Positions 3,353-63,227 of a stretch of 64,000 nt of DNA are shown in pieces (positions within the stretch are counted from its first letter, which is position 1; every line of letters starts with the position of its first letter). Source of the stretch: Octopus bimaculoides. Taxonomy: Eukaryota. The translations under genes were made by a program, and so were the position numbers. The notes beneath the pieces were generated by a model. The model saw nothing but the letters and a program-made list of their open reading frames with translations, ran no database searches and had not been told where the DNA came from. Location of the stretch: contig NC_068984.1 in assembly GCF_001194135.2 (NCBI RefSeq), positions 25,234,142 through 25,298,141 on the forward strand. Direction: 5' to 3'.

Positions 3353-3616
3353 CTGGCAGTGCTTCTTCCATATAAAAGGGGAAACACTAATATGGATCAG
3401 TCCGGGGTGACCCTTTGAGGAATAGGTCAAAATTAATCAAGAGCAGACATATTTATTTTTAATCTTTCCCTGAAGACCAGCAGACTGAAATATGCTGATT
3501 GCAGTAGATTAGACAAGTGCTAAAACACCCTGACACGACCCACAGTAATGAGTATGGTACAAAGGGTAAGCAGGAAAAAAGAGTTGGAAACAAGGAGTTT
3601 GACAAGAGTCACTTAC

Positions 3617-3716
3617 GAGGAGGTTCACACTGAAGGGACAACTCCTGCAATTTGTCTTCATCAGTTATCACTGGCATTTTATTCAAGTACGACTTAACAC
3701 GTTTGATCATCTGAGC
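3617..3716 (-). CDS. RAPGEF2: PDZ-GEF exon 22: AQMIKRVKSYLNKMPVITDEDKLQELSLQCEPP (not in ORF track)
   Basis: Translated by hand; acceptor ttttccag, donor GTAAGT; 100 nt, phase 0-1; resembles AQMARKVKQYL...SLQCEP. Confidence 0.95.
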
Positions 3717-3899
3717 CTGGAAAATAAGAAAAAGAGAAAATAATCATTTCTTCATCGTCATCAAAAATACATTAAATGTAGAGTACAATAGTTAAAGAAC
3801 TGAAAATTTTGACTCATGGCAAGTTTCTAAAAGGATTGCAGTTCTAATTAAAAGGGATTTAGAAAAATTTGCCACAAACAATGGTCAAAAAAGATTTAA

Positions 3900-8106: not shown

Positions 8107-8206
8107 TCGCTATTTTGATGAAATGCTTTAATATTTTCATTCGTTTAACAGGATTGGTTTCACTGCAGACTTCCGATACCACCCAAAACATTTCCCGGTT
8201 TGCAAG
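8107..8206 (-). CDS. RAPGEF2: PDZ-GEF exon 17: [36 protein letters not shown]25 domain
   Basis: Acceptor ttcttcag, donor GTAAGT; 100 nt, phase 0-1. Confidence 0.96.
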
Positions 8207-8344
8207 CTGAAGAAAAGCGAAACAAAATATTAGCTATGTTTTTTCGCTTTATTTTTGAACTCAGAATGTAAAGTAGACATTAAACAATGATGAAGTTAAT
8301 GCATCTTCAATACTTTAAAATGAAATATCATGTAAGACACTTAC

Positions 8345-8805: not shown

Positions 8806-9700
8806 TCAATACAAGCATAAGACCAAAAATTTGGTAGTGGGAGTTAGTCAATACCACTGAACCCAGTACTTTAAGTGGTATTTTATATTATCAACTTCCA
8901 AAAGGATGAAAGGCAAAGTTGACCCCAATGGAATTCGAACTCGCAATGTAGAGAGCTGGAACAAATACTGCAAAACATCTCTTTTCCAATGTTTTAATGA
9001 TTCCAGCAATCCACTACCCTAATATTAATAATAATAATAATATTGGTTTCAAACTTCGACACAGGACCAGCAGTTTTTGAGGGGAGGGGGAAGTTGATTA
9101 TATCAACCACAGTAGTTGACTGGTACTTATTTTATTGACCCTAAAATTATCAAAGGCAAAGTTGACCTTGGTGAAATTTGAACTCAGAAAGTAAAGCCAG
9201 AAGAAATGTTGCTAAGCATTTTGTCCAGCCTGTTAATGATTCTACTAGCTAACCACCTCAATAACAATAATAATGGCTTCAAATTTTTGCCACAAGGGCA
9301 GCCATTTTGGGGGAGGGGATGAGTCAATTACATCAACCCCAGTGTTCAACTCGTACTTATTTTATCAACCCTGAAAGGATGAAAGGCAAAGTCAACCTCA
9401 GCGGAATTTGAACTCAAAACATAGCAATGGGCGAAATACCACTAAGCATTTTGCCCAGCATGCTAAAGATCCTTCCAGCTCTCCGCCTTAATGATAATCC
9501 TTTCTTCTATATGCACAAGGCCTGGAATTTGGAAGGGAGGGGATCAGCTGATTACATCAATCCCAGTACTCAACTGGTACTTATTTTTTCGACCCCCGAA
9601 ACAGCCTCAGCAGAATTTGAACTCAGAACATAGCAATGGGCGAAATATTGCTGAGCTTTCTATCCAGCAATGCTAACAATTCTGTCAGCTCACCACCACC
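8806..9700 (-). mobile_element. Four head-to-tail copies of tRNA-derived SINE family B separated by short AAT spacers
   Basis: Repeated GGATGAAAGGCAAAGT(T/C)(G/A)ACC and GAATTTGAACTC (B box on minus strand); copies start near 8806, 9045, 9274 and 9505. Confidence 0.85.
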
Positions 9701-11009: not shown

Positions 11010-11159
11010 CTGAAAGAAAAGCAATGAGATCAAAATCAGTCATCAACTGAATATCAATTTCCAAATTTGTATATATGAGCTGTGTATTTCATTCACTTTA
11101 AAATAACTGAAAGACTTTGAAGTCAGGGAAGAGAAATGAGTGAAATATAAAACGTTTAA

Positions 11160-11335
11160 CCCTTTAGCATTCATTACTCTGTCAAATGTAATGCCTTTTA
11201 TTCACATTGTTTTGAATTAAACATGCATCATTTCATAGCTTCAAGATTCCAATGAAGTGGTTGTTCAATTTAAGAACAACAAACATGAAACAAAGAATAT
11301 TTTGGCCACATATGGCTGGTTTAAATGTTAAAGGG
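11160..11335. mobile_element. piggyBac-type MITE, internally deleted copy
   Basis: TTAA on both sides; CCCTTTAGCATT...AATGTTAAAGGG. Confidence 0.8.
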
Positions 11336-12815: not shown

Positions 12816-14225
12816 CTGAAACGTAAACAAACATATATAATTTGGATGAACGGAACAGAACTGCATGTCACATCATCCTCATTCACTCTGACTCTCTCAA
12901 CCTCCACTTGGCCAAAGTATAAGGGATTGCATTGGATTATTCTCATCTCTCTATCAGACTCTCACATCCTTAGGACATGTATAAGAGATTGCATCACACT
13001 TTCTATACCCATTACACTAACTTTGCGCTTTCTGTACTGCCAGTGATAGCTCATTCGCCTCCAGGCCATTTCTTTTGCCATGCATCAGTCATCACCTACC
13101 CTTATCTTCGTCCACCTCTGCTTTTATCAATCACTCTCATCATCCTTCTCAATTCCTTCCTAAATAATCCTGCCTATTCCATTATACTCGTGCTCCTTTC
13201 ACCCACCCATTCGGGTCTATCTGCTGCCATCACTCTCTTTCCTATTCCTCTCCTCAGTCACTGTGCAAATGTATTTGCTTGGGATACAAAGTAATTTCTA
13301 CACCTACACTCTTGCAATTTCTGTCCATTTTACTGTTATTGCTCTCCCTCTGTCCTTTTCTCCTTCCTGGTTTACAGGTCTTAAATATACTTAGTCCCTC
13401 TATATTTTCTGAATAAAAGGGCCCTAACTTCTGTAAAGTGCCATAAAATAAAACGCAACATCCTCTCTAGAGTGATTGGTGAGCTATTCAACTTCTAGTG
13501 CTAGTGTCCCCCAAAATGCACCCAGTACACAGGGTAGAGTGTTTGGCAAATGAGTAGAGATAACTTAGGGTTGTGAGGTCACTTTATGCCTGTTTTGCTG
13601 AGAACTTATCAACCGTTTTAGTGTTGATTCTATGAGAATGGACACAATATATACTGTACAATGGGCTAATACGAAATTATTCAAGCTGTGATGACTCATC
13701 CAACACATGCTAGCATGGAAAGTGGATGTAAAATGATGATCATGTAAAGCATTATACAAATGTTCGTCCATATTTAGTTAACCAAAAATAAAACAACTCC
13801 TCTTCTCATCGTTTCAAATACAAATAAACACAATCATCCAGCAATTAGCCAGGCAGTTCAATTTGTTATTCTTTAGCAGGTTGTAAAGGAACAAAGACAA
13901 GGAGTCCACATCTTACATCAGCCATCACAACAAAACTAAATCTCTCCATTAACATTTTTCTACTTTGCAAAGCAAACATAAAACAACATTTCTCCCATCA
14001 CATTGTTACAGGATATATTGTGATAATAGTCAGGAAAATTAACATTTAAACCAAGATATTTACAATAGTAATGATGATAATATATGTAAACAAATTGTCA
14101 ATTTTTTGCTATTTTCTTCATGATAGAAAACATTTTACGAATTATTGAAGAAAAGAACATACTGTTAGGGAAAATATGATCTTAACACAAGATATACCCT
14201 AAGTAAAATGCAAAATATATTTTAA

Positions 14226-14446
14226 CCCTTTAGCATTCAGATTACTCTGTCACATATAATGCTCATTTAATAAGATTATTTTGAATTAATCATGAATTAT
14301 CTCATAGCTTTGAGATTTTGATGGTGTGATGGTCTATTTTTAGGATGACATTGTAAGGTAGACGTGAAAGGCTTGATCAGGCCAGTTTCAACAATAAAAC
14401 AGGTTGATTATTTTGGCCAGATATGGCTGATTTAAATGCTAAAGGG
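14226..14446. mobile_element. piggyBac-type MITE (TTAA TSD, CCCTTTAGCATT termini)
   Basis: TTAA/CCCTTTAGCATT...AATGCTAAAGGG/TTAA. Confidence 0.85.
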
Positions 14447-14595
14447 TTAAACTACACTAAAAACAAATGGCACATGAATAAAGAGGAGATAGGTTGTTGT
14501 TTAAGATTTAATATAGTAGAAATAATTTTAATATTTAGTGATATTAACTATGCAGCCAAAATAATGATAGAAATGGAAACTAAAACAAGGCTTAC

Positions 14596-19959: not shown

Positions 19960-20227
19960 NNNNNNNNNNNNNNNNNNNNNNNNNNNNNNNNNNNNNNNNN
20001 NNNNNNNNNNNNNNNNNNNNNNNNNNNNNNNNNNNNNNNNNNNNNNNNNNNNNNNNNNNNNNNNNNNNNNNNNNNNNNNNNNNNNNNNNNNNNNNNNNNN
20101 NNNNNNNNNNNNNNNNNNNNNNNNNNNNNNNNNNNNNNNNNNNNNNNNNNNNNNNNNNNNNNNNNNNNNNNNNNNNNNNNNNNNNNNNNNNNNNNNNNNN
20201 NNNNNNNNNNNNNNNNNNNNNNNNNNN
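19960..20227. other. Assembly gap (268 N) flanked by a G run and (TA)n
   Basis: Run of N in the sequence. Confidence 1.
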
Positions 20228-28201: not shown

Positions 28202-28306
28202 AGAAAAGTGTCTCATAAAATCCAAAAGTGTTTCAATATCATCTTCAGTCCTCTTGTCTGGATCTTTCTTCAGACTCTCGTACACAATATCTCGTGTTGT
28301 ATAGAG
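28202..28306 (-). CDS. RAPGEF2: PDZ-GEF exon 4: LYTTRDIVYESLKKDPDKRTEDDIETLLDFMRHFS
   Basis: Acceptor ctgttccag, donor GTAAAT; 105 nt, phase 0-0; resembles [27 protein letters not shown]. Confidence 0.94.
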
Positions 28307-28583
28307 CTGGAACAGAATACAAGAAAGTATATAAAAGACCATTTAACAATTGTAAAATAACAAAATCAAGAAATTAACAACAGATGGTTTGAAAAAAATC
28401 TCAAAGGAACCAAATCCTACAAGGAAATAAGTTGAAAATTAGAGGAAAAAAATGGGGAGGGAGAAATGAATATGAAAATTATAGAATGACTCAAGTTTAC
28501 ATTCTGGTCTATGTTCTCTCTACATAGAGAAATCTATAGAAATGAAATATTATCAAGATAATGACCCTCAGTATATCATTTAA

Positions 28584-28799
28584 CCTTTTAGCATTCAGAT
28601 TATTTAGTCAAATGTAGTAGTTATTGACATTGTTTTGAATTAATCATGTATTACCTTGTAGCTGTGAGATGTCAACAATGTAATTATATATTTTAAGAAT
28701 GACATTGTAGGATAAGTGTAAGAGGCCAAATCTGGCTAGCTGGAACATAAAACATGTAGATTATTTGGGTTGGATATGGCCAGTTTGAATCCTAAAGGG
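28584..28799. mobile_element. piggyBac-type MITE, diverged copy
   Basis: TTAA/CCTTTTAGCATT...CCTAAAGGG/CTAA. Confidence 0.7.
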
Positions 28800-30540
28800 C
28801 TAACATGACCAACTGTTATCACTGCTGGGCTAATAAGCTGTTCCTACCTTAGTACCTAATTTAAATTAAGGGACTTTTTCTGTTTTGGAGGAAGAGCAGA
28901 GCCCATGACATTTCACAGGATTCAATAATATGAAGAGTAAAGGGAGGAACCATGACTTGCAATTCTAAGTCTAGAGAACTAGTTCAAATACTTGCAACAG
29001 AGTCAACTCCGCTAAAGGTACCCAAGAGCAATGTGTTGGTGTTAAAGCAGACACCAATGAAGTCTACTAACTAAATAACAACATGGTGAACCTGACAGAC
29101 CTGCATGGTGTCTATCAACCCAGATACACTTACAATGAATGATTGGATGAACCTGAGGCTACAGTAGAAGGTCCTTGCCAAAGGCACTACATAGTGAAAT
29201 TGAAATTGAAACCATGGGATTGTTAAGCAAATTTCTTAAATGCATGGTCATTCTTTTCATGCAGGTAAAGTTCAAAGTTTTGTCCAAAGAGCTCAAAAAT
29301 TCATATAATTGAACTGCATGTATACTGCAAGTTCTTTGACTAAACCCTAATCAGCTACTGGACCTTTTTTTTTTTTTATCCCTATCAGAAATGCAGATAA
29401 AACACAATCAATAATGTAATACTTACAAGTTTCAAATTAGTACATAACAGTAATTAAATATTGATTATTATAGTTATCATAATTAGGAAATGCATTAGGT
29501 AGTAAACACCTAGTTACTTGACTATCAGTTCATATACAGCCATGAGGATATCTGAACTCTTAATGTAAGAGTGGGGCAAAATATATCAATAAGTTATTAC
29601 AATTAGGTCAGTAAATAATTCTAGTAATCTAAAAAGAACCAACTGATCATGCAATCATGTACAACTCTTTATAACATGGAATTTCCTAAATTATTAATGA
29701 AAAACTAGTCAAATAAAAGCATAATATTTTATTAGAAATATTTTTTTGAATCATATGGAATTCATGAAAAGAATCTAGGAAAAAGGAATTTCTAACATGA
29801 ACAACTGTATACATACTAGCTAGTGGGTCTAAGAATTCATATTAAAAACAAAAAAGTTTTCAGTAAAACTAATCTCATCACAAAATTACGTGAAGGTATT
29901 TGTATAAGTAGACTGAAAATTACTGGAAAATAGGAACTTTTTGAATGCATGATATAAAATTCTGATATAACTCTAAGGCATGTAATGAAAGGTATAGAAA
30001 TATTTTATTTGAACCTGATCAAAGTGAATGGGAGTGTATGCATGTGTGTGTTTATGCACATGTGATGTATGCTTTCTATTGGAGCTGTTAATGTAGTTGA
30101 CTGCTTTCTACTTTAACTCTTTCCAATCCAACACACCTGAGACTATCTCTTAAAGTTTTCAAGTTTAAATACAAATCTTGTTTGAAATCTGTATTCTTGC
30201 TTGAAAGAATAATATTTGATTTTAATAAGTAAATTACTCTATTTCGAATACCAGCTTAATATACCTATAAATAACTTTATTATTTTTCTAAATCACTTGT
30301 TAGAAATAAATTGGTTTAGTGAACAAAGATTTCACTTTAAACATTACTAAGAACCCTGACTTCTATTTTTATTTAGTTAAGTTTCTCTATCAAACACTAA
30401 AGCCTTTTTATTTTTACATTTAGAATATGAATCCAGAAGCATTGAGAGAGATATAATTAAATCATTTATTAGTGTGTTGCAAAGCAAATGCAACTATACA
30501 GAAGAGCTTGTAATATACTAAGTTAAAACTCTCTTGCATA

Positions 30541-30623: not shown

Positions 30624-32103
30624 TTTGGGCTCTCTTCCATCAAATTGGAAGCTTAAATCTTGAGTTTTGTTTATTTCTGTGTTCTAGCTTTCATGAAATT
30701 TGTTAGTTTCTTCTACAGATATACACTTTAAAAGAATTATTTACATATGTATATCTGCATCCAGGTGTTAAATTTGATAAATTCCTTTCTGATTTGTTTC
30801 CCCTTGGAGCAAATCAAATGGCCTTTTAATTAATATGACAGTATCTTAAGCATTTTAGCCAGCAAACTTCAACTTATTTCAGTCCATTAGTGTAACTTTC
30901 TATCAAGGCTACAAGGCAAACAAAGCCTCATTATATATAATTAAAGTTATGCTATACAAATGACACAGAATATCAAATAGCAAACTGTAGTGCAAAACAT
31001 ATAACAAGCTGCATCTGACATTTGCTTATTAAAATAAGCGGAGATCTTAAAACTTGATTTTGTCATGTTTCCTTCCACCTCGGTTAAAGAGAGAATTGTA
31101 ACCCCCATCTCAAAATCTTAGTTCTTTGCAGCTGGCATGACACTATTTTGATTGCAACTAATTGTCAAGTGTCAAATGAATGACATGCATAACAAAGAAC
31201 AAACTGTTAGATTCAGTTCTATAGAACAGACAGTTTGTTTAATGCAGCTTGTTGCAGTGATTTTTCTGCAAAGATTAGCAAGCCATGTGGTAACAAGCTT
31301 CATCACATAACTAGGTTTAGATCTTCTTGTAATTATTTTTCAACCTTCCAGATTTAATAAAGTACCAGTAACCTACAAATGCTTATTTCTTACTTTCAAA
31401 ATTAGCTACACCACTAGGTGGAGTGGAAGGAAATAACCTATTTCATGTGACAATTTTTTCATGTTTCTTTATTATATCACTAAAGGATATACAGAAATGG
31501 GGTTATGATTAGAGAATGTTAACATGTTCTGGGCTGTATAATATGATCCAATATTGAAATTCAAAGGAAAATTGCTGTATAAATGTCTGATCAAAAAATA
31601 TGAATAATCATTTGCCTAACAATGGTGAAAATAAAATAATTGATATGTTTTGGCTGAGAATGTGGGCTTCTTAAAGAAGCAAACTTTTCAACAGTGATAT
31701 ACCTGAAGAGTAGTTGATGAGGAAATACTGAAAAAGCCATTTTGCAAATTGAAGAGCAGAAAGTGAGAGAAAGAGAGAGACAGACAATCAGACAGATGAA
31801 AGGAATGTATCATGTTCATGGATATTTTAACTTGAGAAGTTAAAAATAATTATACTACTTTTGAAAACTAGTTGTCTTTCAGCAAGGCATGAAAGTCCAT
31901 ATCCCTAATTTTTCCTTACCTTTTAGGGAGAAGGGGTGAGAGAGAAGGAGAGAGATATAAAACTGATACTGAATCACAATTCAAATTGTTAACTTGATTA
32001 AGCAACCTGATGGTTTACAGAACTGGATTTGAATCATTTCACATGAACTCTATATTAAAAATTCACCAACAATACGCAGGTTTCATATTACAATATTTAT
32101 TAA

Positions 32104-32320
32104 CCCTTTAGCATCTAGATTATTCTGTCACATGTAATGCTTATTTATCCACATTGTTTTGAATTAATCATGCATTATTTTGTGGCTTCAAGATCTCAGT
32201 GATGTGATTGTTTATTTTTACAATGACACTGTAGGGTAGGTGTGAGATGTTGGATCTGACCAGTTTGAACATAAAAGCAGAATATTTTGGCCAGATATAG
32301 CTAGTTTAAATGCTAAAGGG
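32104..32320. mobile_element. piggyBac-type MITE, same family
   Basis: TTAA on both sides; CCCTTTAGCAT...ATGCTAAAGGG. Confidence 0.85.
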
Positions 32321-34171
32321 TTAAAAGGAGAAATGACTATTACCGGTATTCACCAGGAAATAATATCAACCTAAAACATTTTTTAAAATTCTAAACACAA
32401 AATAAGTTTGTATGGTATCATAACTTTTGTATGTTTGAAATATCATGAAGTATTTATGAGTTTCCTTCATTAGCTACTCCTATTAATCAATTGGGAAATC
32501 AACCTCAGAAGAATAAAAATTACAATATTAACTAAGGTTGGGTTTGAAATAGAACTACAGGTTCCGAGCATATAGTGAACATCATATCAATTCTGACCTC
32601 TTAAACCGCAGCCAACAACAGGATATATTAATGATTTTAAGTGGAACATGACACTTATGACAAAAACTTTAGTGTACACCCTAAAATATGTGTTTGTGAT
32701 GCATGTTTTACAATTTAGTCATGACATATAAAAATACATAAAAAGATCTATATTAGGTTGGGTAAAATCTTTGTCATGAATACAACTAATAGAAAGTGGA
32801 AACTATGAGTGATAAAATGAAATTTAATCTGAAAAGGAAAGAGAGAAATATCCATAAAAGTCAAATTAGAATTGAAGACACTGACCATTTTCATGTCAGC
32901 AGAACTTATTAAAGAATAAGTAAATGCTTCATTTCTTAATTAATTAATTAATTAAATATCAAGAACGTTTAAGTGTATAAAATTAACTGACAGAAAAAGT
33001 ACTTCCCAAATTTAAAACATTTTCAAATAAACATTAATCTTTTTCTTTTTATTCTGTTGAGTTACTGACATATTTTATTTTAGTAATATTATATGTACAT
33101 ACATTTGATAGTATATCTTTCCTACTCTAGGCACAAGGTCTGAAATTTTTGAGGAGGGGATGACCAGTCGATTAGATCAACCCCAGTACGACCCTGAAAG
33201 GATGAATGGTGAAGTTGTCGACCTTGGCGGAATTTGAACTCAGAATGTAAAGACAGGCGAAATACCACTAAGCATGTCACCCGGCGTGCTAACATTTCTG
33301 CCAGCTCGCTGCCTTTGATAGTATATCTGTGCCTCTTTGTCTCTCCACTGAATTGATATGTTTAAATATTAAACATAAGTGCACATGAAATGTAATTTGA
33401 AATACCTGCATAAAATTATGTAAATGTTTAGAACAGAAATGAGTGTCTTCTTTTTTTTTTAATGTTGACTACATATGATTATGAAATCATTGTGATTGGT
33501 GTAGTGACATAGACCTAGTGGCAGTAAAACTATTGTAACAGTTAGGAATCACAATATCCAACCAGCTTCACATTACAAATGACGAGAAAGTATTCAAGAT
33601 GCCATCAATAGAACAAACTTTGCAATAAGTCAGTTTAGCTTATGTGTTGTAGGACATGCTAGGGAGAAAGTGCAAGAAAGGGTTGAACGAGGGAAAAGGA
33701 GTGAGAGAAAGGGAAAAACAATGGAATAACAAAATCAGATATGAGAAAATAATAATTAAAAAAAACAAGAAGAAATCAAGACAAAGTGCCAAAGAAAGGA
33801 AAGTGAAAGAGGGAGAGAAAGAAAGATAAAAGAAAAATAATATGAGACAAAGGTAGGGAATAGAGAGAAGGATACCAAAAAGAGAGAATGTATAGAAAGG
33901 TAATGTAAAATGCCTAATGCTGATATAATATAACTAGAACAGAGTGTTTTGCCAAGGGACATGAGAACTAACTACAACCAGAGAACACCATTATGATCAG
34001 GAGAACCAGAGGAATAATACACAGTGTACTATAACAAAACACAAACTATTATATAGATAAAGAGGAACAAATTAATAATTATTTTCAATTGTTTACTTCT
34101 TTTTATTGCCTATATGTAAGGCTTTTACTAACAGGTACAATTTTCATTAAGACTTAGTAAATATATATATA

Positions 34172-34491: not shown

Positions 34492-34650
34492 TCACAGACA
34501 AGAAACACAATAGCATAAATGTAATAAGTGTTACTGAGATTGAAAACTGGGGGGAGGGGGTCATTTTTGTTTTGTTACAGTGCAGAAGAAGCAGAAAGAT
34601 ATATTGCATTTTTATTGTGTAAAAGACAAAACACAAAAACTAAACCTCAC

Positions 34651-34671
34651 CTCCTGGAAAAGATCAAATCG
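34651..34671 (-). CDS. RAPGEF2: Candidate 21-nt microexon RFDLFQE between exons 3 and 4
   Basis: ttttttttccccttcag/CGATTTGATCTTTTCCAGGAG/gtgagg; phase 0-0, matches both neighbours, no stop. Confidence 0.65.
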
Positions 34672-35532
34672 CTGAAGGGGAAAAAAAAGAATATAGAATG
34701 CATAACAGGTTCTTTGATCAAGATAGAGAGAATAAGAGACAAACAAAGAATAAAAGAAAATCACCATTTAAAACAGGCATAGGCACCCTTTTTTTTTTTG
34801 AGACGTAGTCTGCATGAGACATGGCTCATCATCAGACAGGCCACACTACTAAAAATATTTGAAGTAATTTTTCTTTAAGTGTGCTGTTCAGAAAGTCCTG
34901 CAAGCTACAGGATACCCATGACTGATTTAAAAGAACAAATATGTAGTTTGGAAGCAACAAATAAAAATGTCACAAAGAAAAGTTGTCATTTATAATAAAT
35001 TCCAGATTCCAGCAATACAAATCATTATCAACATCATTATCACCTCCATCATCCTTCTCCTCCTCCTTCAACATCTGCTTTCCATGCTGGCAAGGGCTGA
35101 ACTGATATCAGATTTTTAAATTTACAATTTGCAACGAATAGAAAAAAACCAAGTTGAAAACACAATTACTTTTATAATACTGGAATTTAAAAATAAAAAA
35201 ATCCGATATTATATTTGTCATTATTTTTGAGAAGCTCCAAAATAACTGAGAGTTGATAAAATTATCAAGAATCATAATTAGATTTCTTTTCTTGTTCAAA
35301 ATTCCAGAAACAAAGAGATATTACTTGATTCTCAACTACCTTGAATGCATTAATTGCCAAATAGTTCATTAGATATATTTCCATCATAAATCATCATAAG
35401 AGTAACTGGCAATAGAAAGTAATTATTTTCTAGTGTGTTATCTGAGAAACTAATTAACTCTCAAGTTCACTTTCACATCTGTAACTCTTCATAGCCAAAT
35501 AAAATTTATAGTTAAACTCAATAATATATATA

Positions 35533-38939: not shown

Positions 38940-39167
38940 CTCTGAAGATTCTCCATAACCTTCTTCTTCATCAGAATCTACCATGCTTTCTGTCAGGCCG
39001 CTGTACTCGAGGTCAACATTTTCCTGCCCATCTATCGAGGATTGCATTACATCTGACCCAGAGTATGCACTTGACGTGTCACTTGCCCGAGAATTCCGCT
39101 TCAACCAACTTTCCCTCAAACACTGGTCAGCCAGCCGAGTGAGATGGTTGGAATATTCTGGAGCCAT
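38940..39167 (-). CDS. RAPGEF2: PDZ-GEF exon 3: MAPEYSNH...SRASDTSSAYSGSD...VDSDEEEGYGESSE (76 aa)
   Basis: Acceptor aatttcag, donor GTAAGA; 228 nt, phase 0-0; Ser-rich then acidic VDSDEEE motif as in RAPGEF2/6. Confidence 0.92.
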
Positions 39168-54712: not shown

Positions 54713-55689
54713 TCGTGGAATTAAATGCTGCATACTAAGTAACTTCAATAAAGTCAGAAAATTAGAATTTTAAATGACAGAAGTCAAACTGTTTCAGACA
54801 ATAGTACACATCAGAAGGGAAAACAAAAAATTCAGAAAATTATATTCTTGACAATTGTAACAGAACAACCAGGGGTACCAAAACATCAAAGGAAAACAAG
54901 CCTAAAGATGTAAAGAAATCTACAGAAGGATTGATTTTATAATGATATGGCAACTGATAAAAACACTTTATACTATTAGTTTCAAATTTGGCACAAGACC
55001 AACAATTTGGGAGGAAGAGGTAAGTTGATTACATCAACCCCAGTGCTTATTTTATTGACCCCAAAAGGATGAAAGGTATAGTCAACTTCAGCAGAATTTG
55101 AACACAGGCCATAAAGACTGACAAAAAGCCACTAAGCACATTGTCCAGAGTGCTAACAATTTTGCCAGCTCACCACCTTAAAACACTTTAAAATATCGGA
55201 AAGTTTTAAGCATTTTTCTACTGGTTGTCTTAACACATTGTATCCTGAACACACTAAATCAAGATCACAGTCTCAGAGTCAGAATATGCACAAGCCCAGT
55301 GTAATCAAGCACATTACAAAACAGCCCATGATGATTGCAAAGTTAAAAGTTTTAAAACTCAAGGATGCAGTAAATTATATCTGGAAAATCTGGTCTAGCA
55401 CAAAACTTTGGTTTGAAAGGTGCATGAATCCCAGAAATGGATTACGCTTACTGCATAGTAACAAAAGCTTCACATTTTCCTTCATGGATTCAGATCACAT
55501 ACTGCATTAGTTTAAGGTTTGATATTATCTTCAAAACAAAGGATCTGTATGGTGTGATGAAATCACTGAAACTTGAACAGTCTACTGTATATGGTCTGCA
55601 CCTATGTCACAGCAGGGTATGCAAATAAGAGTATTGTTAATCAAATGTTCCCATTTCCACAACATAAAGGCTACATAGATAATCTTTTC

Positions 55690-55898
55690 TACTCTAGGCA
55701 CAAGGCACAAAATGGGGGGGGAGGGGGGCCAGTCAATCAGATCGACCCGGTATGCAACTGGTACTTAATTTATCGACTCCAAAAGGATGAAAGGCAAAAC
55801 TGACCTCAGCAGAATTTGAACTCAGAATATAAAGACAGATGAAATACCGCTTAGCATTTCACCCAGCATGCTAACGTTTCTGCCAGCTCGCTGCCTTT
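55690..55898 (-). mobile_element. SINE family B, well-preserved copy; others at about 7829-8035, 16003-16160, 22925-23175, 23787-24000, 33123-33315, 42440-42610, 54980-55178
   Basis: Minus-strand head AGGCAGCGAGCTGGCAGAAACGTTAGC and B box GAGTTCAAATTC; core GCCTTTCATCCTTT. Confidence 0.85.
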
Positions 55899-58800
55899 AA
55901 GCTACATAGATATTGGCAGGAACAGTAAAAGAGAATAATAGACCGGTTTTAAATTGTGTATCTCAAGTTTTCTATATGTATTTGTCTTTTGCATGCACTT
56001 GGAATGTCAAGCATAATATTGCTTTTGCACCATTTTCAAAATGAACTTTGTCTATTATTCTCATACTTGAATCATGATTTTTGATTCACATCTTGAGAGT
56101 ATTCATAAGTATATATTCACATACCCATAAAGAAACTTGACAGTGACTTAGAAATGTTGCCAAATGATGCTTTGCCAGACTACCTGATAAAACCAATAGT
56201 CAGAGAAAGTTCAGTCACTGTCAGCCTTTTCTTTGTAAAAATATATTCCATGTGATGATGATGATGAGCACTTAAATGTATTCATTAAACTTTCAATTAA
56301 CAATTGTTTTTCTATACGTATACATAAACACAAATTATACATATATTTGTCTTTGGGGGGGGGGGGGATTAATGTTCAGTTTTCCCTGCTAGCAGGAGTT
56401 TGGATGGAGATTTAATTGAGACAGGATTTTTGCGGCTGGGTGCTCTTCCTGTCACAGACCCTTACTTGTTTTCCAGGTAAGGAATTTCTTTATTCTGAAA
56501 GTTTTTGAAAGTGCAGAGTAGCTAATCAAAGTACCAAAAAGAAATGTATCCACAAAAAAATCAGCCTTGCTTTGCTCAAGCAGTGATAAGCACAATATAA
56601 ACATTCATGCACATCTGCACACATGCACATATCTACAACAAACTTCCTGCAGTTCCCTTCTACCAATTTTCTTTACGCAGCATTGGTTAGCTGGGGTCAA
56701 TAGTAGCAAACTTTTAACCCAAGGTGTTGTGCAATCGGGCTGAATCTGAAACCACACTGGTGCAGAGTAAACTTATCATAGCCATGCTCCCCTCCACACA
56801 CACAATTACAAGTAGCAAATCACTTAGGCAATTTCAACAGTACTATTTATCCAATTGAAAATCAACAACTAATTCAAAAATTATAAATGTATGTACGCTT
56901 TCAACACTCTGACCTTCTTACAGATATTACAAAACAATTGATAGAATGAGTGATGGTGTTGAAAAGGTTTAAAACACCTTTGAAGAGTAATTCTACATAT
57001 GAAAATGCTATTAATATCAAGAATGGTTAACTATCAATCAAGATAATTAAGTCAGAAACAAGTAGTATAAGGATATAATTTGAAGAAAAGTGGGGTGTGT
57101 TCAATTTGTGTAATAATAAATTATTAAAAATATGTTTTATTAATTGAACATTTACTTTAAATCTCAAGAGGATGATACCTGTAGCCAGGGGAATTTAATA
57201 TGACCTAAGCAAAATATGAAAATCACACACAAATTATGAAAAATAAAAGATTATTGAAGCAATGATGCATAAAGGATAAAGACACTGGTTAGAAGTAAAA
57301 TTTCATTATTATTAAATGATGAAAGAAAGGGAGGTAAGAAAATAAATAAAAATGAATATTAAGTATGAAAACAGGATATGAAGGGTGGAAAATGTTGATT
57401 AAAAACTATATGGAGATCATCATTATTATCATTATTCATCTGTTTTTCATACTGGCATGCATAGGCTAGCTGGACAGGATCCAACAACTCAGAAGGCTAC
57501 ATAAACTTTTAAACAATTATACACTTGCCAATAACCTGATGAGTCAACGAGAGGACTTCTCTGTAGTTGTTTAACCTACTGGAAATCACAGTCAAATCTA
57601 TTTTAAATCACACTCTATCATATTTAAGAAAGAAAGAATATTTTAGATAATGTAGTCCTAGATGGAAATGGCTGGAATGCCTTTGATCACAGATAGATTT
57701 GTTTGATGCTTGATCAATACTGATACAGTTCAAGAATATATATATATATATATATATATATATGGGATTCGCAGTTTAGGCTTGTTATAGTAGTAGTTGT
57801 AGTAGTAACAACAACAAATATCTAAATGTTAAGAATTAAAGCAAAACAATTGTTTGATAATAATATTAACCCACCCACCCCAATTCAGTGTGAAAGTAAC
57901 TGAGAAACAGTAAAAAAAAAAGACTACAAGAATTAACAAAAGAATTTTGCTCAACACTGCTGTACAGTAATTTCAAATTCTTTTGATCAACCTCTTAAAG
58001 ACAAAAATTTTTTTAATTTTCAAGACAAAAATGTGGCTTCAACTTTAGACAAACGTTTTAGAAGCTGAGATTTTAATTTTCTGAAAATCATGAAGTTTGT
58101 TTATACTTTAAATAGTTCTATCACAGAGTAACTTCATGCTAAAAACAAGGCTATTAATGGGAATGTATACATTTTCTGTATCAAATATTTGATTACTATC
58201 TAAGAAAACATTTCAGAAAAGCTACTAAGAGGAAGTGAAATGATGTATATACTTCAGTCACCCAACTGTTTTTCCTTAGCAAGAAAGGGGAGTGGTGAAA
58301 GAAAACTGCACACAAGTAATACTAGACATATTTACAGTTATAAATGTTAATTACCAATATTGATTAATAACAAATTTATAAAACTTTTCATGTACGTGTG
58401 CGCGTATGTATGCGTGTGTGTGTTTGTTGCTATAAAATTTGATAAAAACTGGGTCATGAAATTCTAACATAATTAACTTATGGCTATTAATACTGAACAG
58501 ATTTAAGTGTAAACACATTACTTACCAGTCATTGTTCAAAATTCATCTCTCTAGAACTACTTCCAATCTATTATCCTTGCTGCTCCAAATAGGTCACAAA
58601 AACAGTGGTCAAAATATTTCCATTGTTATTGTAATTATCAGTGAAATACCCAGAAACTGCACATTGCTTCAGTTAAGCTGAAGCTAACAGCTAAAATGTT
58701 ATAGCCAAAGCAGTTAAAATTTTCTATTGCAATTTTAAACATTTTCCCATTTCAAATAGAAAGCTAGAATTGATAAAATCCAGATAAACTGTTAAATACT

Positions 58801-61063: not shown

Positions 61064-62108
61064 CTGAAAAAGAAAAGAGAAACTGAAATGAAAATCTCAT
61101 AAAATTTGCTTACGACAGACAAATGCTGTAATTTCTTGTAAAAGTTCATTGATTTTCTGACAACAAAGTAAATAAACTGATTAGATTAGTCAACAAGGTC
61201 AATAAAACAGATAATCATCATAAAGAAAACTAGAAAAAGTGGCATGGTAATTCATCAGAACCAGGCAATGAGAAGGAATTCTTTCAAAATATCAAATATC
61301 TTTTGAGGAAAACTGTGTGTGTTTGAATACGCATGAATATAACATATATATTTGTATTTATTATTGTAGGTTTGTGTGTATAGCCATAACAATAGAAGTG
61401 GAAATACAAACAAAATGTTTATGTAATCTTATGTGTATATAACAATGCTTATTTAGGTGTTTTTTCAAAGTTATTTATCTAATATATCACCATCATTTTA
61501 TATTCCCTATCCCTATGTATAATGGAAAGGACAGGTTTCACAGCATCTTGTTGCTATCATTTGTCATTCAGCACACACAACATCAGAGGAAACCACCAGT
61601 GCTGCATACTTTTTTTTCCTATAAGTTCTCATCACCAATCACTTTACAACATGGACTTCTTATTCAAAGTTACTGACATCCTGGACAGGCTGCCTGCGAT
61701 GCAGCCCACTAAAATCTATGTTTCCTGTGTCAAGTTCACCTTCTGCTTAACATACTCACCCCAATCCCATATAGACACCCTTCCTACAAGTAATCACTTT
61801 CTAATATGGACTGAGAATATTTTAAAATGCAATCAACACTAGAGTTGTCTGCAGCAAGGATAAAGTCTTCCCTAACCTATTCTTCATAATATCTAATGGT
61901 ATTTTGTTTCCAGAGTTCAATACAATATCCAAATAATCTCCAAAGCATCAGCACATATGCATATACAGAGGTAGGGGAGAGATAAAAGCTGGCAGACACA
62001 GAAGAATAAGGGGGACAACAGTAAATTGCTAAAAAAGTAAACAAAGAATCGAAATTTCCTTCAAACAAACTGAACAAACAGAAATCCAATTTCTGCCTTC
62101 AAATTTAA

Positions 62109-62315
62109 CCCATTAACATTTAAACCAGCCATATCTGCTCCAAATATTCTGCCAGTTTTAAGTTGAAAAAAGCCCAATCTGGACTTTCACACATACCCCA
62201 CAATGTCATTCTAAATACAAACAATCACACTGAAATGTTGGAGCTACAGGATAATGCACGATTAATTCAAACCAATAAGCATTATATTCGACAGAGTAAT
62301 CTGAATGATAAAGGG
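62109..62315. mobile_element. piggyBac-type MITE in opposite orientation
   Basis: TTAA/CCCATTAACATT...AATGATAAAGGG/TTAA; interior is the reverse complement of 14226-14446. Confidence 0.75.
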
Positions 62316-63227
62316 TTAATCAACTGAAAAATCTGCATAACCTGAAACACTCCCAAATAAATCTTCAGTGTGTTTGAATTTTGAGAATTAGATGTGAAGA
62401 CAATGCAGCAGACTGTTTTTTGCCAGTTACAGGGATGAAAATAAACCAATACTGGCTGTCAAGCAGTGGTGGTAATGATGGTGGTCATGGTGGGACAAAC
62501 ACAAATATACATACACACACAACAGGCTTCGAAACAGTTTCCATTTAGCAAGTTCCCTCACATGGTGTTGGTCAGCTTGGGGGTATAGAAGAAAACACTT
62601 GGCCATAGGTTGTGCAGTGGAACTGAACTCAAAACCACATGGTTGCAAAGTAATCTTCTAAACCACATCCATGCCTGTAAGCCAGGTCTGTTCAGTGCTG
62701 GTATTTTTCTTTCTAACAACAATTAAGTGGAAGTGATACCAGTGAAAGTAAGCTAAACAAGGTGTTCTGTACAGGATCAGAACACAAATGGCTGCAGCAA
62801 GTCTTGGACATGTGACTATGAAGTCAATAGTCCAGCACTTCAAGCTACTAGTTCCTGTGCCTGTTTGAGTGCAATCTGAACTGTTGAAAGTTGATATTTA
62901 CAGAAAAAACATGAACAGGATGTGGATTTCGCTAATCAGAAAACTGATTCTGATACAGATAGACAGATGGAGAAACGAAGGGGGGGTGGGAAGCTAAGGA
63001 CAGAATCAATACTTATTAAATGTAGTAGGGGAACATTATTTACTAATTTGAGCAAGACTTTATAAACTTGCAAAAACACTGCAGTTGTACCATGAAATAT
63101 TAACTCTACCTCTCCCAATAACACTTCTGCATGTACATGTGTGTAATAAAAATAACAAATAGACTATTTTTGAGGCCAACATGCAAAACGTCTTCTTAAC
63201 AAAGAATTGTGATCCCATTGTCACAGT

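What the first reader, a model, noticed from the sequence alone, without database searches (positions are those of the whole stretch)
34651..34671. 21-nt frame-preserving microexon candidate (RFDLFQE) in the middle of a 10.6-kb intron
Seen: strong pyrimidine tract ttttttttccccttcag, 21 nt without stop, donor GAG/GTGAGG; phase 0-0 matches exons 3 and 4, giving ...GESSE-RFDLFQE-LYTTRD...; a TGC lies about 30 nt upstream of the AG. Established: neural microexons are usually 3-27 nt, frame-preserving, UGC-associated (SRRM/eMIC programme) and enriched in GTPase regulators. Inference: a regulated peptide insert just before the cNMP-like regulatory region, likely to be missed by automated annotation.
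Basis: partly seen in the sequence, partly recalled or inferred. Interest (0 to 1): 0.7.

Follow-up and report, generated by a model that had tools for sequence, protein, structure and literature searches.

The report
Candidate 21-nt microexon in RAPGEF2-like gene
A 21-base in-frame mini-exon with unusually strong splice signals lies in a long intron of a RAPGEF2/6 (PDZ-GEF) signalling gene; it is probably a real, lineage-specific spliced exon, but no RNA or close-relative data could be reached, so its use and any brain-specific regulation are unproven.

Summary
The described sequence is present on the minus strand as written: ttttttttccccttcag|CGATTTGATCTTTTCCAGGAG|gtgagg (34671..34651, RFDLFQE). 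It lies 4,268 nt into a 10,633-nt phase-0 intron of a RAPGEF2/6 (PDZ-GEF) orthologue.

It is more than chance. With a simple splice-site matrix, its acceptor ranks 3rd of 3,422 AGs and its donor 3rd of 3,834 GTs on that strand. Both donor and acceptor beat nearly all confirmed exons of the gene. It is the only acceptor/donor pair scoring at least 6/6 within 3-60 nt on either strand. None appeared in 300 simulated introns at its own thresholds. The region is unique sequence, not a repeat.

I found no supporting homology:
- Orthologous transcripts from other phyla join the two flanking exons directly.
- Five orthologous introns show no counterpart.
- The closest relative found (L003, exon 4 83% identical) shows none in the 8.1 kb available.

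No RNA data for this species were reachable.

The eMIC/SRRM reading is not supported by the sequence. The 3' splice site is very strong rather than weak. The UGC at -31 is expected by chance (P about 0.38). There is no CUAAY branch point.

Verdict: probably a real, lineage-restricted cassette microexon (about 0.6). Its tissue regulation is unknown. It would be a new member of a known kind, of moderate interest.

The parts
38940..39167 (-). It encodes MAPEYSNHL...SRASDTSSAYSGSD...VDSDEEEGYGESSE. Donor GAG|gtaaga.
   Evidence: Translation. Homologous exon-3 ORF fragments from many invertebrates. Splice scores.
34672..34771 (-). 3' splice-site region of the candidate. It is 72% pyrimidine over 100 nt, with a UCUC/CUCU cluster at -68..-57 and yUnAy branch-point candidates at -50 and -65. 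The nearest upstream AG is at -41, a UGC lies at -31, and the tract ends ttcttttttttccccttcag.
   Evidence: the pyrimidine content is in the top 0.5% of all AG-preceding 100-mers on this strand and above all 11 confirmed exons; acceptor score 10.9, rank 3 of 3,422.
34651..34671 (-). Candidate microexon, 21 nt, CGATTTGATCTTTTCCAGGAG = RFDLFQE, phase 0-0.
   Evidence: It is the only in-frame open cassette candidate in the intron. No repeat copy exists in the window.
34645..34650 (-). 5' splice site gtgagg, preceded by GAG. Seven contiguous consensus positions (-2 to +5).
   Evidence: donor score 8.6, rank 3 of 3,834, above all 11 confirmed donors of the gene.
34611..34644 (-). U/GU-rich stretch just downstream of the donor (tttagtttttgtgttttgtcttttacacaataaa). 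It may act as an intronic enhancer.
   Evidence: 56% T, in the top 3% of all stretches following a GT on this strand. Its function is inferred only.
28202..28306 (-). It encodes LYTTRDIVYESLKKDPDKRTEDDIETLLDFMRHFS, the lead-in to the cNMP-like domain.
   Evidence: It aligns to RAPGEF6 cNBD structure 2D93 and to Epac2 from 'SLKKDP' onward. A homologue lies in L003 at 8118-8222.

Best explanation
This is most likely a genuine but lineage-restricted 21-nt cassette exon of a RAPGEF2/6 (PDZ-GEF) orthologue.

RNA level. A long pyrimidine-rich 3' splice region (about 100 nt, branch point probably near -47) and a near-consensus 5' splice site 21 nt downstream give the tiny exon the strong signals it needs, because an exon this short cannot rely on internal enhancers. 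Because the skipped form matches the arrangement in every other animal examined, the exon is probably alternative rather than constitutive. Regulation more plausibly involves proteins that bind the extended CU-rich upstream tract and the U-rich downstream stretch. This resembles the PTB-repressed, enhancer-activated arrangement of the c-src N1 exon (compared from my own knowledge) more than the classical SRRM/eMIC signature.

Protein level. Inclusion inserts RFDLFQE, which carries three bulky hydrophobic residues. It goes into the acidic, probably disordered linker, four residues before the near-invariant RDxV..L.K.P motif that leads into the cNMP-like regulatory domain. The insert could add a short docking motif or change how the linker packs on that domain.

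Shown here: the sequence, the phase, the statistical exceptionality, the unique sequence, the position in the protein, and the absence of a counterpart from the orthologues examined. Inferred: actual splicing, alternative use, the regulators and the protein effect.
For: - The acceptor and donor each rank 3rd of about 3,400-3,800 candidate sites on the strand. They are the only pair scoring at least 6/6 within 3-60 nt on either strand.
- They are stronger than 10 of 11 confirmed acceptors and all 11 confirmed donors of the same gene.
- 0 of 300 simulated introns contain such a pair.
- It is the only in-frame, stop-free cassette candidate in the intron.
- Five orthologous introns and the L003 partial intron (about 21 kb examined in total) yield no frame-preserving pair even at thresholds 3/3. 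Such pairs are therefore rare in real introns.
- The region has no repeat copy within this 64-kb window, matches no Rfam family or tRNA and has no unusual RNA structure (z = +1.1).
- The upstream 100 nt is 72% pyrimidine (top 0.5%) and the downstream stretch is U-rich (top 3%).
- The intron position and phase are conserved across phyla, so an insert here keeps the reading frame.
- Zebrafish rapgef2 carries several microexons, including a 24-nt one whose deletion changes behaviour (PMC13281805 and PMC12626420).
- A 2026 preprint reports that neural exons of outgroup species, which include octopus, are rarely conserved in another species (median 3% per species). Most instead arise in gene families that evolved neural exons in other species too (10.64898/2026.09.05.749416).
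Against: - No transcript or junction evidence could be obtained.
- No protein or ORF in the 5.8-billion-sequence database contains RFDLFQE at this junction.
- The skipped form aligns without a gap to invertebrate orthologues.
- No counterpart was found in the 8.1 kb upstream of exon 4 in the closest relative, L003. That stretch carries retroelement remnants and the contig ends there, so this is weak evidence.
- No counterpart was found in the orthologous introns of loci L001, L002 and L004-L007.
- Exons this short are hard for the spliceosome to define, so strong sites alone do not guarantee inclusion.
- The weight matrix used generic metazoan frequencies recalled from memory, not a model trained on this species.
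Confidence: 0.6

Rival explanations
1. It is an unused pseudo-exon. The AG and GT signals look excellent, but the spliceosome never, or only negligibly, includes the 21 nt, for example because such a short exon cannot be defined without a dedicated activator. The sequence would have no function.
For: No conservation was found in any relative reached. No protein with the insert was found. The ancestral protein architecture needs no insert. The same intron also holds an orphan acceptor (32828, score 11.0) and an orphan donor (31920, score 7.9), so strong isolated sites do occur without a known exon.
Against: Two top-0.1% sites occurring 21 nt apart, in frame and open, is expected about 0.002-0.008 times per strand of the window from empirical site counts. 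It occurred 0 times in 300 simulations. The extended pyrimidine tract and U-rich downstream flank are extra exon-like features that chance does not predict.
Confidence: 0.27
2. It is a neural, SRRM3/4 (eMIC)-dependent microexon. This is a specific sub-case of the best explanation: inclusion would be switched on in neurons by eMIC-domain protein binding to UGC near the 3' splice site.
For: The length of 21 nt is within the 3-27 nt range. It preserves the frame, and the host gene is a GTPase regulator. There is a long pyrimidine tract with a UCUC cluster, and one UGC upstream at -31. Vertebrate rapgef2 carries microexons studied in srrm3 mutants.
Against: eMIC targets in flies and mammals have extremely weak 3' splice sites, UGC close to the 3' splice site and strong CUAAY branch points (PMC8797185). 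Here the 3' splice site is among the strongest in the window. The UGC is about 30 nt away and at chance level (P about 0.38). No CUAAY is present. In the zebrafish data the 24-nt rapgef2 microexon itself changed by only about -4 PSI in the table rows retrieved.
Confidence: 0.18
3. It is a constitutive microexon that is always included in this lineage, so the true protein always contains RFDLFQE.
For: Both splice sites are stronger than those of the flanking constitutive exons. Strong sites favour constitutive use. With the insert, the linker length is closer to that of vertebrate RAPGEF2/6.
Against: The form without the insert matches the length and pattern of all invertebrate orthologues. A counterpart is absent in the closest relative's available sequence and in five other orthologous introns.
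Confidence: 0.08
4. It is a stepping-stone for removing the long intron (a recursive-splicing exon) and does not persist in the mature mRNA.
For: It has a strong 3' splice site followed closely by a strong 5' splice site in the middle of a 10.6-kb intron.
Against: Recursive splicing needs a 5' splice site to be rebuilt at the junction of the upstream exon with the recursive site. Joining ...TCAGAG to CGATTT gives GAG|CGATTT, which is not a 5' splice site.
Confidence: 0.03

Closest known systems
Developmentally regulated microexons of vertebrate rapgef2, for example the zebrafish 24-nt exon DreEX0060838 (PMC12626420, PMC13281805)
   Same: The gene family is the same (RAPGEF2/PDZ-GEF). The exon is tiny and frame-preserving, 24 versus 21 nt. 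The gene is reported to contain several microexons, and deleting one alters larval activity.
   Different: I could not determine the position of the zebrafish exon in the protein. No vertebrate RAPGEF2/6 sequence retrieved shows a variable insert at the exon 3/exon 4 junction. No sequence similarity to RFDLFQE was seen. If the candidate is real, the relation would be recurrent evolution in the same gene, not homology.
SRRM3/4 (eMIC)-dependent neural microexon programme of bilaterians (PMC8797185)
   Same: The length class is the same, the frame is preserved, the host is a signalling gene, and there is a long CU-rich upstream tract.
   Different: The 3' splice site is very strong instead of very weak. 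The UGC is not close to the 3' splice site and is at chance level. There is no CUAAY branch point. Neural specificity is untested.
c-src N1 exon (18 nt), the classical PTB-repressed neuron-specific mini-exon. This comparison rests on my own knowledge and was not tested here.
   Same: It is a very short exon flanked by CU-rich/UCUU elements upstream and pyrimidine- or U-rich elements downstream.
   Different: No downstream (U)GCAUG Fox element is present. Regulation by PTB-type proteins in this species is only an inference.

Membership tests
Cassette microexon (3-27 nt, coding) | Length 3-27 nt bounded by canonical AG and GT | tested here: met
   The exon is 21 nt, bounded by cag| and |gtgagg.
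Cassette microexon (3-27 nt, coding) | Preserves the reading frame of the flanking exons and contains no stop codon | tested here: met
   The flanking exons end and start in phase 0. The insert reads RFDLFQE.
Cassette microexon (3-27 nt, coding) | Actually included in mature mRNA (junction reads) | not testable with these tools
   No transcript data for this species were available. No database protein carries the insert.
Cassette microexon (3-27 nt, coding) | Conservation of the exon and its flanking intron in related species | tested here: inconclusive
   No counterpart was found in L003 (closest relative, 8.1 kb available, carrying retroelement remnants) or in loci L001, L002 and L004-L007. 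No genome of a close relative could be reached.
SRRM3/4 eMIC-dependent neural microexon | Very weak 3' splice site | tested here: not met
   The acceptor score is 10.9, rank 3 of 3,422. The criterion comes from PMC8797185.
SRRM3/4 eMIC-dependent neural microexon | UGC motif close to the 3' splice site | tested here: inconclusive
   There is a single UGC at -31. The chance probability is about 0.38.
SRRM3/4 eMIC-dependent neural microexon | Long polypyrimidine tract with UCUC motifs and a long AG-exclusion zone | tested here: inconclusive
   The tract part is met: the upstream 100 nt is 72% pyrimidine, with a UCUC/CUCU cluster at -68..-57. The AG-exclusion zone is only moderate, with the nearest upstream AG at -41.
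SRRM3/4 eMIC-dependent neural microexon | Strong branch-point sequence (CUAAY) | tested here: not met
   There is no CTAAY within 150 nt upstream. Only yUnAy matches occur, at -50 and -65.
SRRM3/4 eMIC-dependent neural microexon | Neural-specific, regulator-dependent inclusion | not testable with these tools
   This needs tissue RNA-seq or perturbation of the regulator.
RAPGEF2/6 (PDZ-GEF) host gene | Domain order: cNMP-like, RasGEF_N, PDZ, then RA and RasGEF | tested here: met
   Pfam finds cNMP_binding (21.7 bits, below the 27.5 cut-off, hence 'cNMP-like'), RasGEF_N and PDZ. tblastn maps the downstream RA/CDC25 exons. The best database hits are named RAPGEF2/6. Structure 2D93 matches at 8e-42.
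Recursive-splicing exon | A 5' splice site is rebuilt when the upstream exon is joined to the site | tested here: not met
   The junction would read GAG|CGATTT.

The most novel reading that the evidence does not exclude
A cephalopod- or octopod-specific, brain-regulated microexon arose independently in the same gene (RAPGEF2/PDZ-GEF) whose vertebrate orthologue carries behaviourally relevant neural microexons. It would insert a hydrophobic mini-motif just ahead of the cNMP-like regulatory domain. That would be a case of recurrent evolution of neural microexon regulation in a Rap-signalling hub, in two lineages with complex brains.
Probability: 0.22. Interest if true: 0.55.

Novelty: new member of a known kind. 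Interest (0 to 1): 0.35.

Why it matters
If the exon is used, the RAPGEF2/6 orthologue of this animal has an isoform that gene predictors can easily miss. That isoform changes the linker in front of the regulatory cNMP-like domain of a Rap1 activator involved in neuronal signalling.

It would also be a concrete example of microexon regulation evolving repeatedly in the same gene in distant lineages. It can be tested with one RT-PCR or a junction count in existing RNA-seq.

If the exon is not used, it is a clear example of a near-perfect decoy exon. That would be of interest only for splice-site modelling.

Tried and rejected
1. Protein database search with exon 3 + insert + exon 4. It returned only exon-3 or exon-4 ORF fragments from other animals, at most 78% identical, and none carried the insert.
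2. A 388-aa multi-exon query. It returned many RAPGEF2/6 fragments and transcripts, at most 63% identical (64% for P0103 in the later alignment). No close relative appeared, and there was no insert at the junction in any of the sequences retrieved that cover it. The database appears to hold no full-length (about 1,500 aa) RAPGEF2 proteins.
3. Exact-sequence look-ups of three window ORFs, including two that overlap the microexon. None is on record.
4. Orthologous loci L001, L002, L004/L005, L006 and L007, with introns of about 170 nt to 5.7 kb. None holds a frame-preserving microexon-like pair.
5. L003, the closest relative found. There was no blastn, tblastn, pattern or matrix hit upstream of exon 4. 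Much of that sequence looks retroelement-derived.
6. Metagenome scan with a degenerate pattern for the microexon and its splice sites. It gave 0 hits.
7. Structure prediction of the insert-containing fragment.
8. Rfam and tRNA scans found nothing.
9. An RNA fold of +/-100 nt showed no special structure.
10. Supplements of the zebrafish papers. They did not give the position of the rapgef2 microexon in the protein.
11. The recursive-splicing reading was rejected on the junction sequence.
12. The repeat or transposon-exonisation reading was rejected because the region has no other copy in the window.
13. I did not use the third large protein search or the representative-library search. After results 1-3, the chance of an informative result was too low to justify the cost.

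Full report
**Observation.** On the minus strand the window reads ...tattcttttttttccccttcag|CGATTTGATCTTTTCCAGGAG|gtgaggtttag... at 34671..34651.
- The 21 nt translate to RFDLFQE without a stop.
- The upstream exon (39167-38940, 228 nt) ends ...EEGYGESSE followed by gtaaga.
- The downstream exon (28306-28202, 105 nt) starts LYTTRDIVYESLKKDP... after ttccag.
- The intron is 10,633 nt. The candidate lies 4,268 nt from its 5' end and 6,344 nt from its 3' end.
- A TGC lies at -31..-29.

All coordinates and sequence statements of the finding are correct.

**Host gene.** tblastn with human RAPGEF2 and RAPGEF6 sequences, recalled from memory and used only as probes, maps about 16 exons on the minus strand from about 61.0 kb to about 3.6 kb.
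- A spliced 457-aa fragment matches Pfam RasGEF_N and PDZ. It also matches cNMP_binding weakly, at 21.7 bits against a cut-off of 27.5, hence 'cNMP-like'.
- Database hits are named RAPGEF2/6.
- The RAPGEF6 cNMP-domain structure 2D93 matches at 8e-42. Epac2 aligns from 'SLKKDP' onward.
- The insert would therefore lie in the linker between a conserved Ser/acidic stretch (SRASDTSSAYSGSD...VDSDEEE) and the near-invariant RDxV..L.K.P lead-in of the cNMP-like domain, four residues before that motif.

I could not verify which animal the window comes from. Apart from one exon-4 fragment (see L003 under Homology), the best protein identities, to vertebrates, a hemichordate and a gastropod, reach only about 64%.

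**Is it more than chance?** I scored every AG and GT with a simple weight matrix. The frequencies are generic metazoan values recalled from memory, so the scores are approximate.
- The candidate acceptor scores 10.9, rank 3 of 3,422 on the minus strand. The donor scores 8.6, rank 3 of 3,834.
- The matrix is informative. Confirmed exons of the gene (3716, 16488, 20923 and 22716 for acceptors; 7088 for donors) are among the top 12.
- The candidate beats 10 of 11 confirmed acceptors and all 11 confirmed donors.
- It is the only pair scoring at least 6/6 within 3-60 nt on either strand of the window.
- From the empirical counts, three sites of each kind at or above its scores per 64 kb, about 0.008 such pairs are expected per strand. 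The figure is about 0.002 once frame and openness are required.
- In 300 second-order-Markov introns none reached its thresholds, and 0.03 per intron reached 6/6.
- It is also the only in-frame, open cassette candidate of 3-400 nt in the intron at thresholds 4/4.
- Five orthologous introns and one partial intron (L003), about 21 kb in total, contain no frame-preserving pair even at 3/3.

The signal is therefore real and not a chance pattern.

**Surroundings.**
- The 620 nt around the candidate have no other copy in the window apart from a (TA)n microsatellite about 170 nt downstream. SINE-like repeats occur elsewhere in the intron.
- No Rfam family or tRNA is present.
- There is no ORF of 90 aa or more in the intron.
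- The local RNA is not unusually structured (z = +1.1).
- Upstream, 72% of the last 100 nt are pyrimidines. That is in the top 0.5% of all AG contexts and above every confirmed exon.
- There is a UCUC/CUCU cluster at -68..-57. yUnAy branch-point candidates lie at -50 and -65, and the nearest upstream AG is at -41.
- Downstream, +7..+40 is 56% U (top 3%).
- There is no GCAUG and no YCAY cluster.

**Homology.**
- A search with exon 3 + insert + exon 4 found 47 short ORF fragments of this exon pair from other animals. None was a close relative and none had the insert.
- A 388-aa query found many RAPGEF2/6 transcripts and fragments. The ones that cover the junction join the acidic stretch directly to (S/T)L.VRD.
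- The form of the window protein without the insert has the same linker length as invertebrate orthologues. The vertebrate linker is a few residues longer.
- In genomic loci L001, L002, L004/L005, L006 and L007 the same phase-0 intron is 0.17-5.7 kb long and contains no counterpart.
- One fragment, P0038 on contig L003, has an exon 4 that is 80% identical in protein and 83% in DNA. It shares the unusual IVYESL and DFMRHFS residues, so it is the closest relative available and possibly another cephalopod.
- The 8.1 kb upstream of exon 4 in L003 has no blastn, tblastn, pattern or matrix match to the microexon. That stretch carries retroelement remnants and the contig ends there, so the absence is weak evidence.
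- Exact look-ups of window ORFs and a metagenome pattern scan found nothing.

If the exon is real, it is lineage-restricted. I could not obtain a genome of a close relative or any RNA data.

**Mechanism.** The best-supported reading is a genuine cassette exon. Its very short length is compensated by an extended pyrimidine tract with a distant branch point and by a near-consensus donor.
- The form without the exon reproduces the arrangement seen in all other animals, so the exon is probably alternative.
- The eMIC/SRRM signature described for flies and mammals comprises a very weak 3' splice site, UGC close to it, a strong CUAAY branch point and a long UCUC-rich tract (PMC8797185).
- Only the last of these features is shared. 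The 3' splice site is among the strongest in the window, the UGC is about 30 nt away with a chance probability of about 0.38, and no CUAAY is present.
- The CU-rich upstream tract and U-rich downstream flank fit repression or activation by pyrimidine- and U-binding proteins, as in the c-src N1 exon. That comparison is from my own knowledge and is an inference.
- At the protein level the insert adds Phe, Leu and Phe to an acidic linker next to the regulatory domain. A docking-motif or linker-packing effect is plausible but untested.

**Rivals.**
- An unused decoy exon remains the main alternative (about 0.27). Microexons are hard to define, no conservation was seen, and the intron also holds an orphan strong acceptor (32828) and an orphan strong donor (31920).
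- Constitutive use is less likely (about 0.08), given the architecture of the orthologues.
- Recursive splicing is excluded by the junction sequence GAG|CGATTT.

**Comparison with known cases.**
- Zebrafish rapgef2 'contains several microexons'. Deleting a 24-nt one increases daytime activity (PMC13281805 and PMC12626420). I could not establish where that exon lies in the protein, and no vertebrate sequence retrieved varies at this junction.
- A 2026 preprint that includes Octopus bimaculoides reports that a median of only 3% of neural tissue-specific exons per outgroup species are conserved in another species. Most of the rest lie in gene families that evolved neural exons in other species as well.
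- An independent origin in this gene would fit that pattern.

**Verdict.**
- If real, this is a new member of a known kind.
- Probability that it is truly spliced: about 0.6-0.7.
- Interest: moderate (0.35).

Noticed in passing
window 57879-57899 (minus strand): A second, weaker 21-nt AG...GT pair: tttttttttactgtttctcag|TTACTTTCACACTGAATTGGG|gtgggtgg. Both site scores are at least 5. It lies in the large upstream intron of the same gene, and frame 0 contains a TGA.
   Followed up: partly
window 38940-39167 (minus strand): The exon before the candidate begins with ATG directly after a weak acceptor (score -4.8; actaaatatcttaatttcag|ATGGCT). It could also serve as an alternative translation start, or as a short isoform lacking the N-terminal cNMP domain encoded near 61.0 kb.
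   Followed up: no
window 32092-32325, 28580-28803, 14214-14451, 62104-62323, 11156-11271: A SINE-like repeat family of about 230 nt (70-82% identity between copies) is scattered through the introns. A second family lies at 33115-33316, 55682-55898 and 9291-9496.
   Followed up: partly
window 32828 and 31920 (minus strand): There is an orphan very strong acceptor (tatttctctctttccttttcag|ATTAAA, score 11.0) and an orphan strong donor (CTAAAAG|gtaagg, score 7.9) in the same intron. Neither has an in-frame open partner.
   Followed up: partly
window 34651-34653 (minus strand): An internal AG inside the microexon (ttttccag|GAG|gtgagg) could in principle give a 3-nt exon adding one Glu. Its acceptor score is only 2.65.
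   Followed up: partly
window 19960-20227: An assembly gap of 268 N, immediately followed by a (TA)n microsatellite. It lies inside an intron of the gene.
   Followed up: no
L003 762-1346 and 4391-4903: The orthologous intron of the closest relative carries retroelement remnants: an RNase H-like ORF (sub-threshold Pfam match, 22.2 bits against a 25.8 cut-off) and an ORF that looks gag-like by eye (CCHC zinc-knuckle pattern, no Pfam match). The gene coordinates reported for this reversed locus did not translate as stated.
   Followed up: partly
proteins P0052, P0060, P0064, P0080, P0098: Several arthropod-like transcript-derived ORFs start with a Met inside the intron just upstream of the exon-4 homologue (M..FQSL.VRD). 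This suggests retained-intron or alternative-start transcripts at this same junction in other animals.
   Followed up: no
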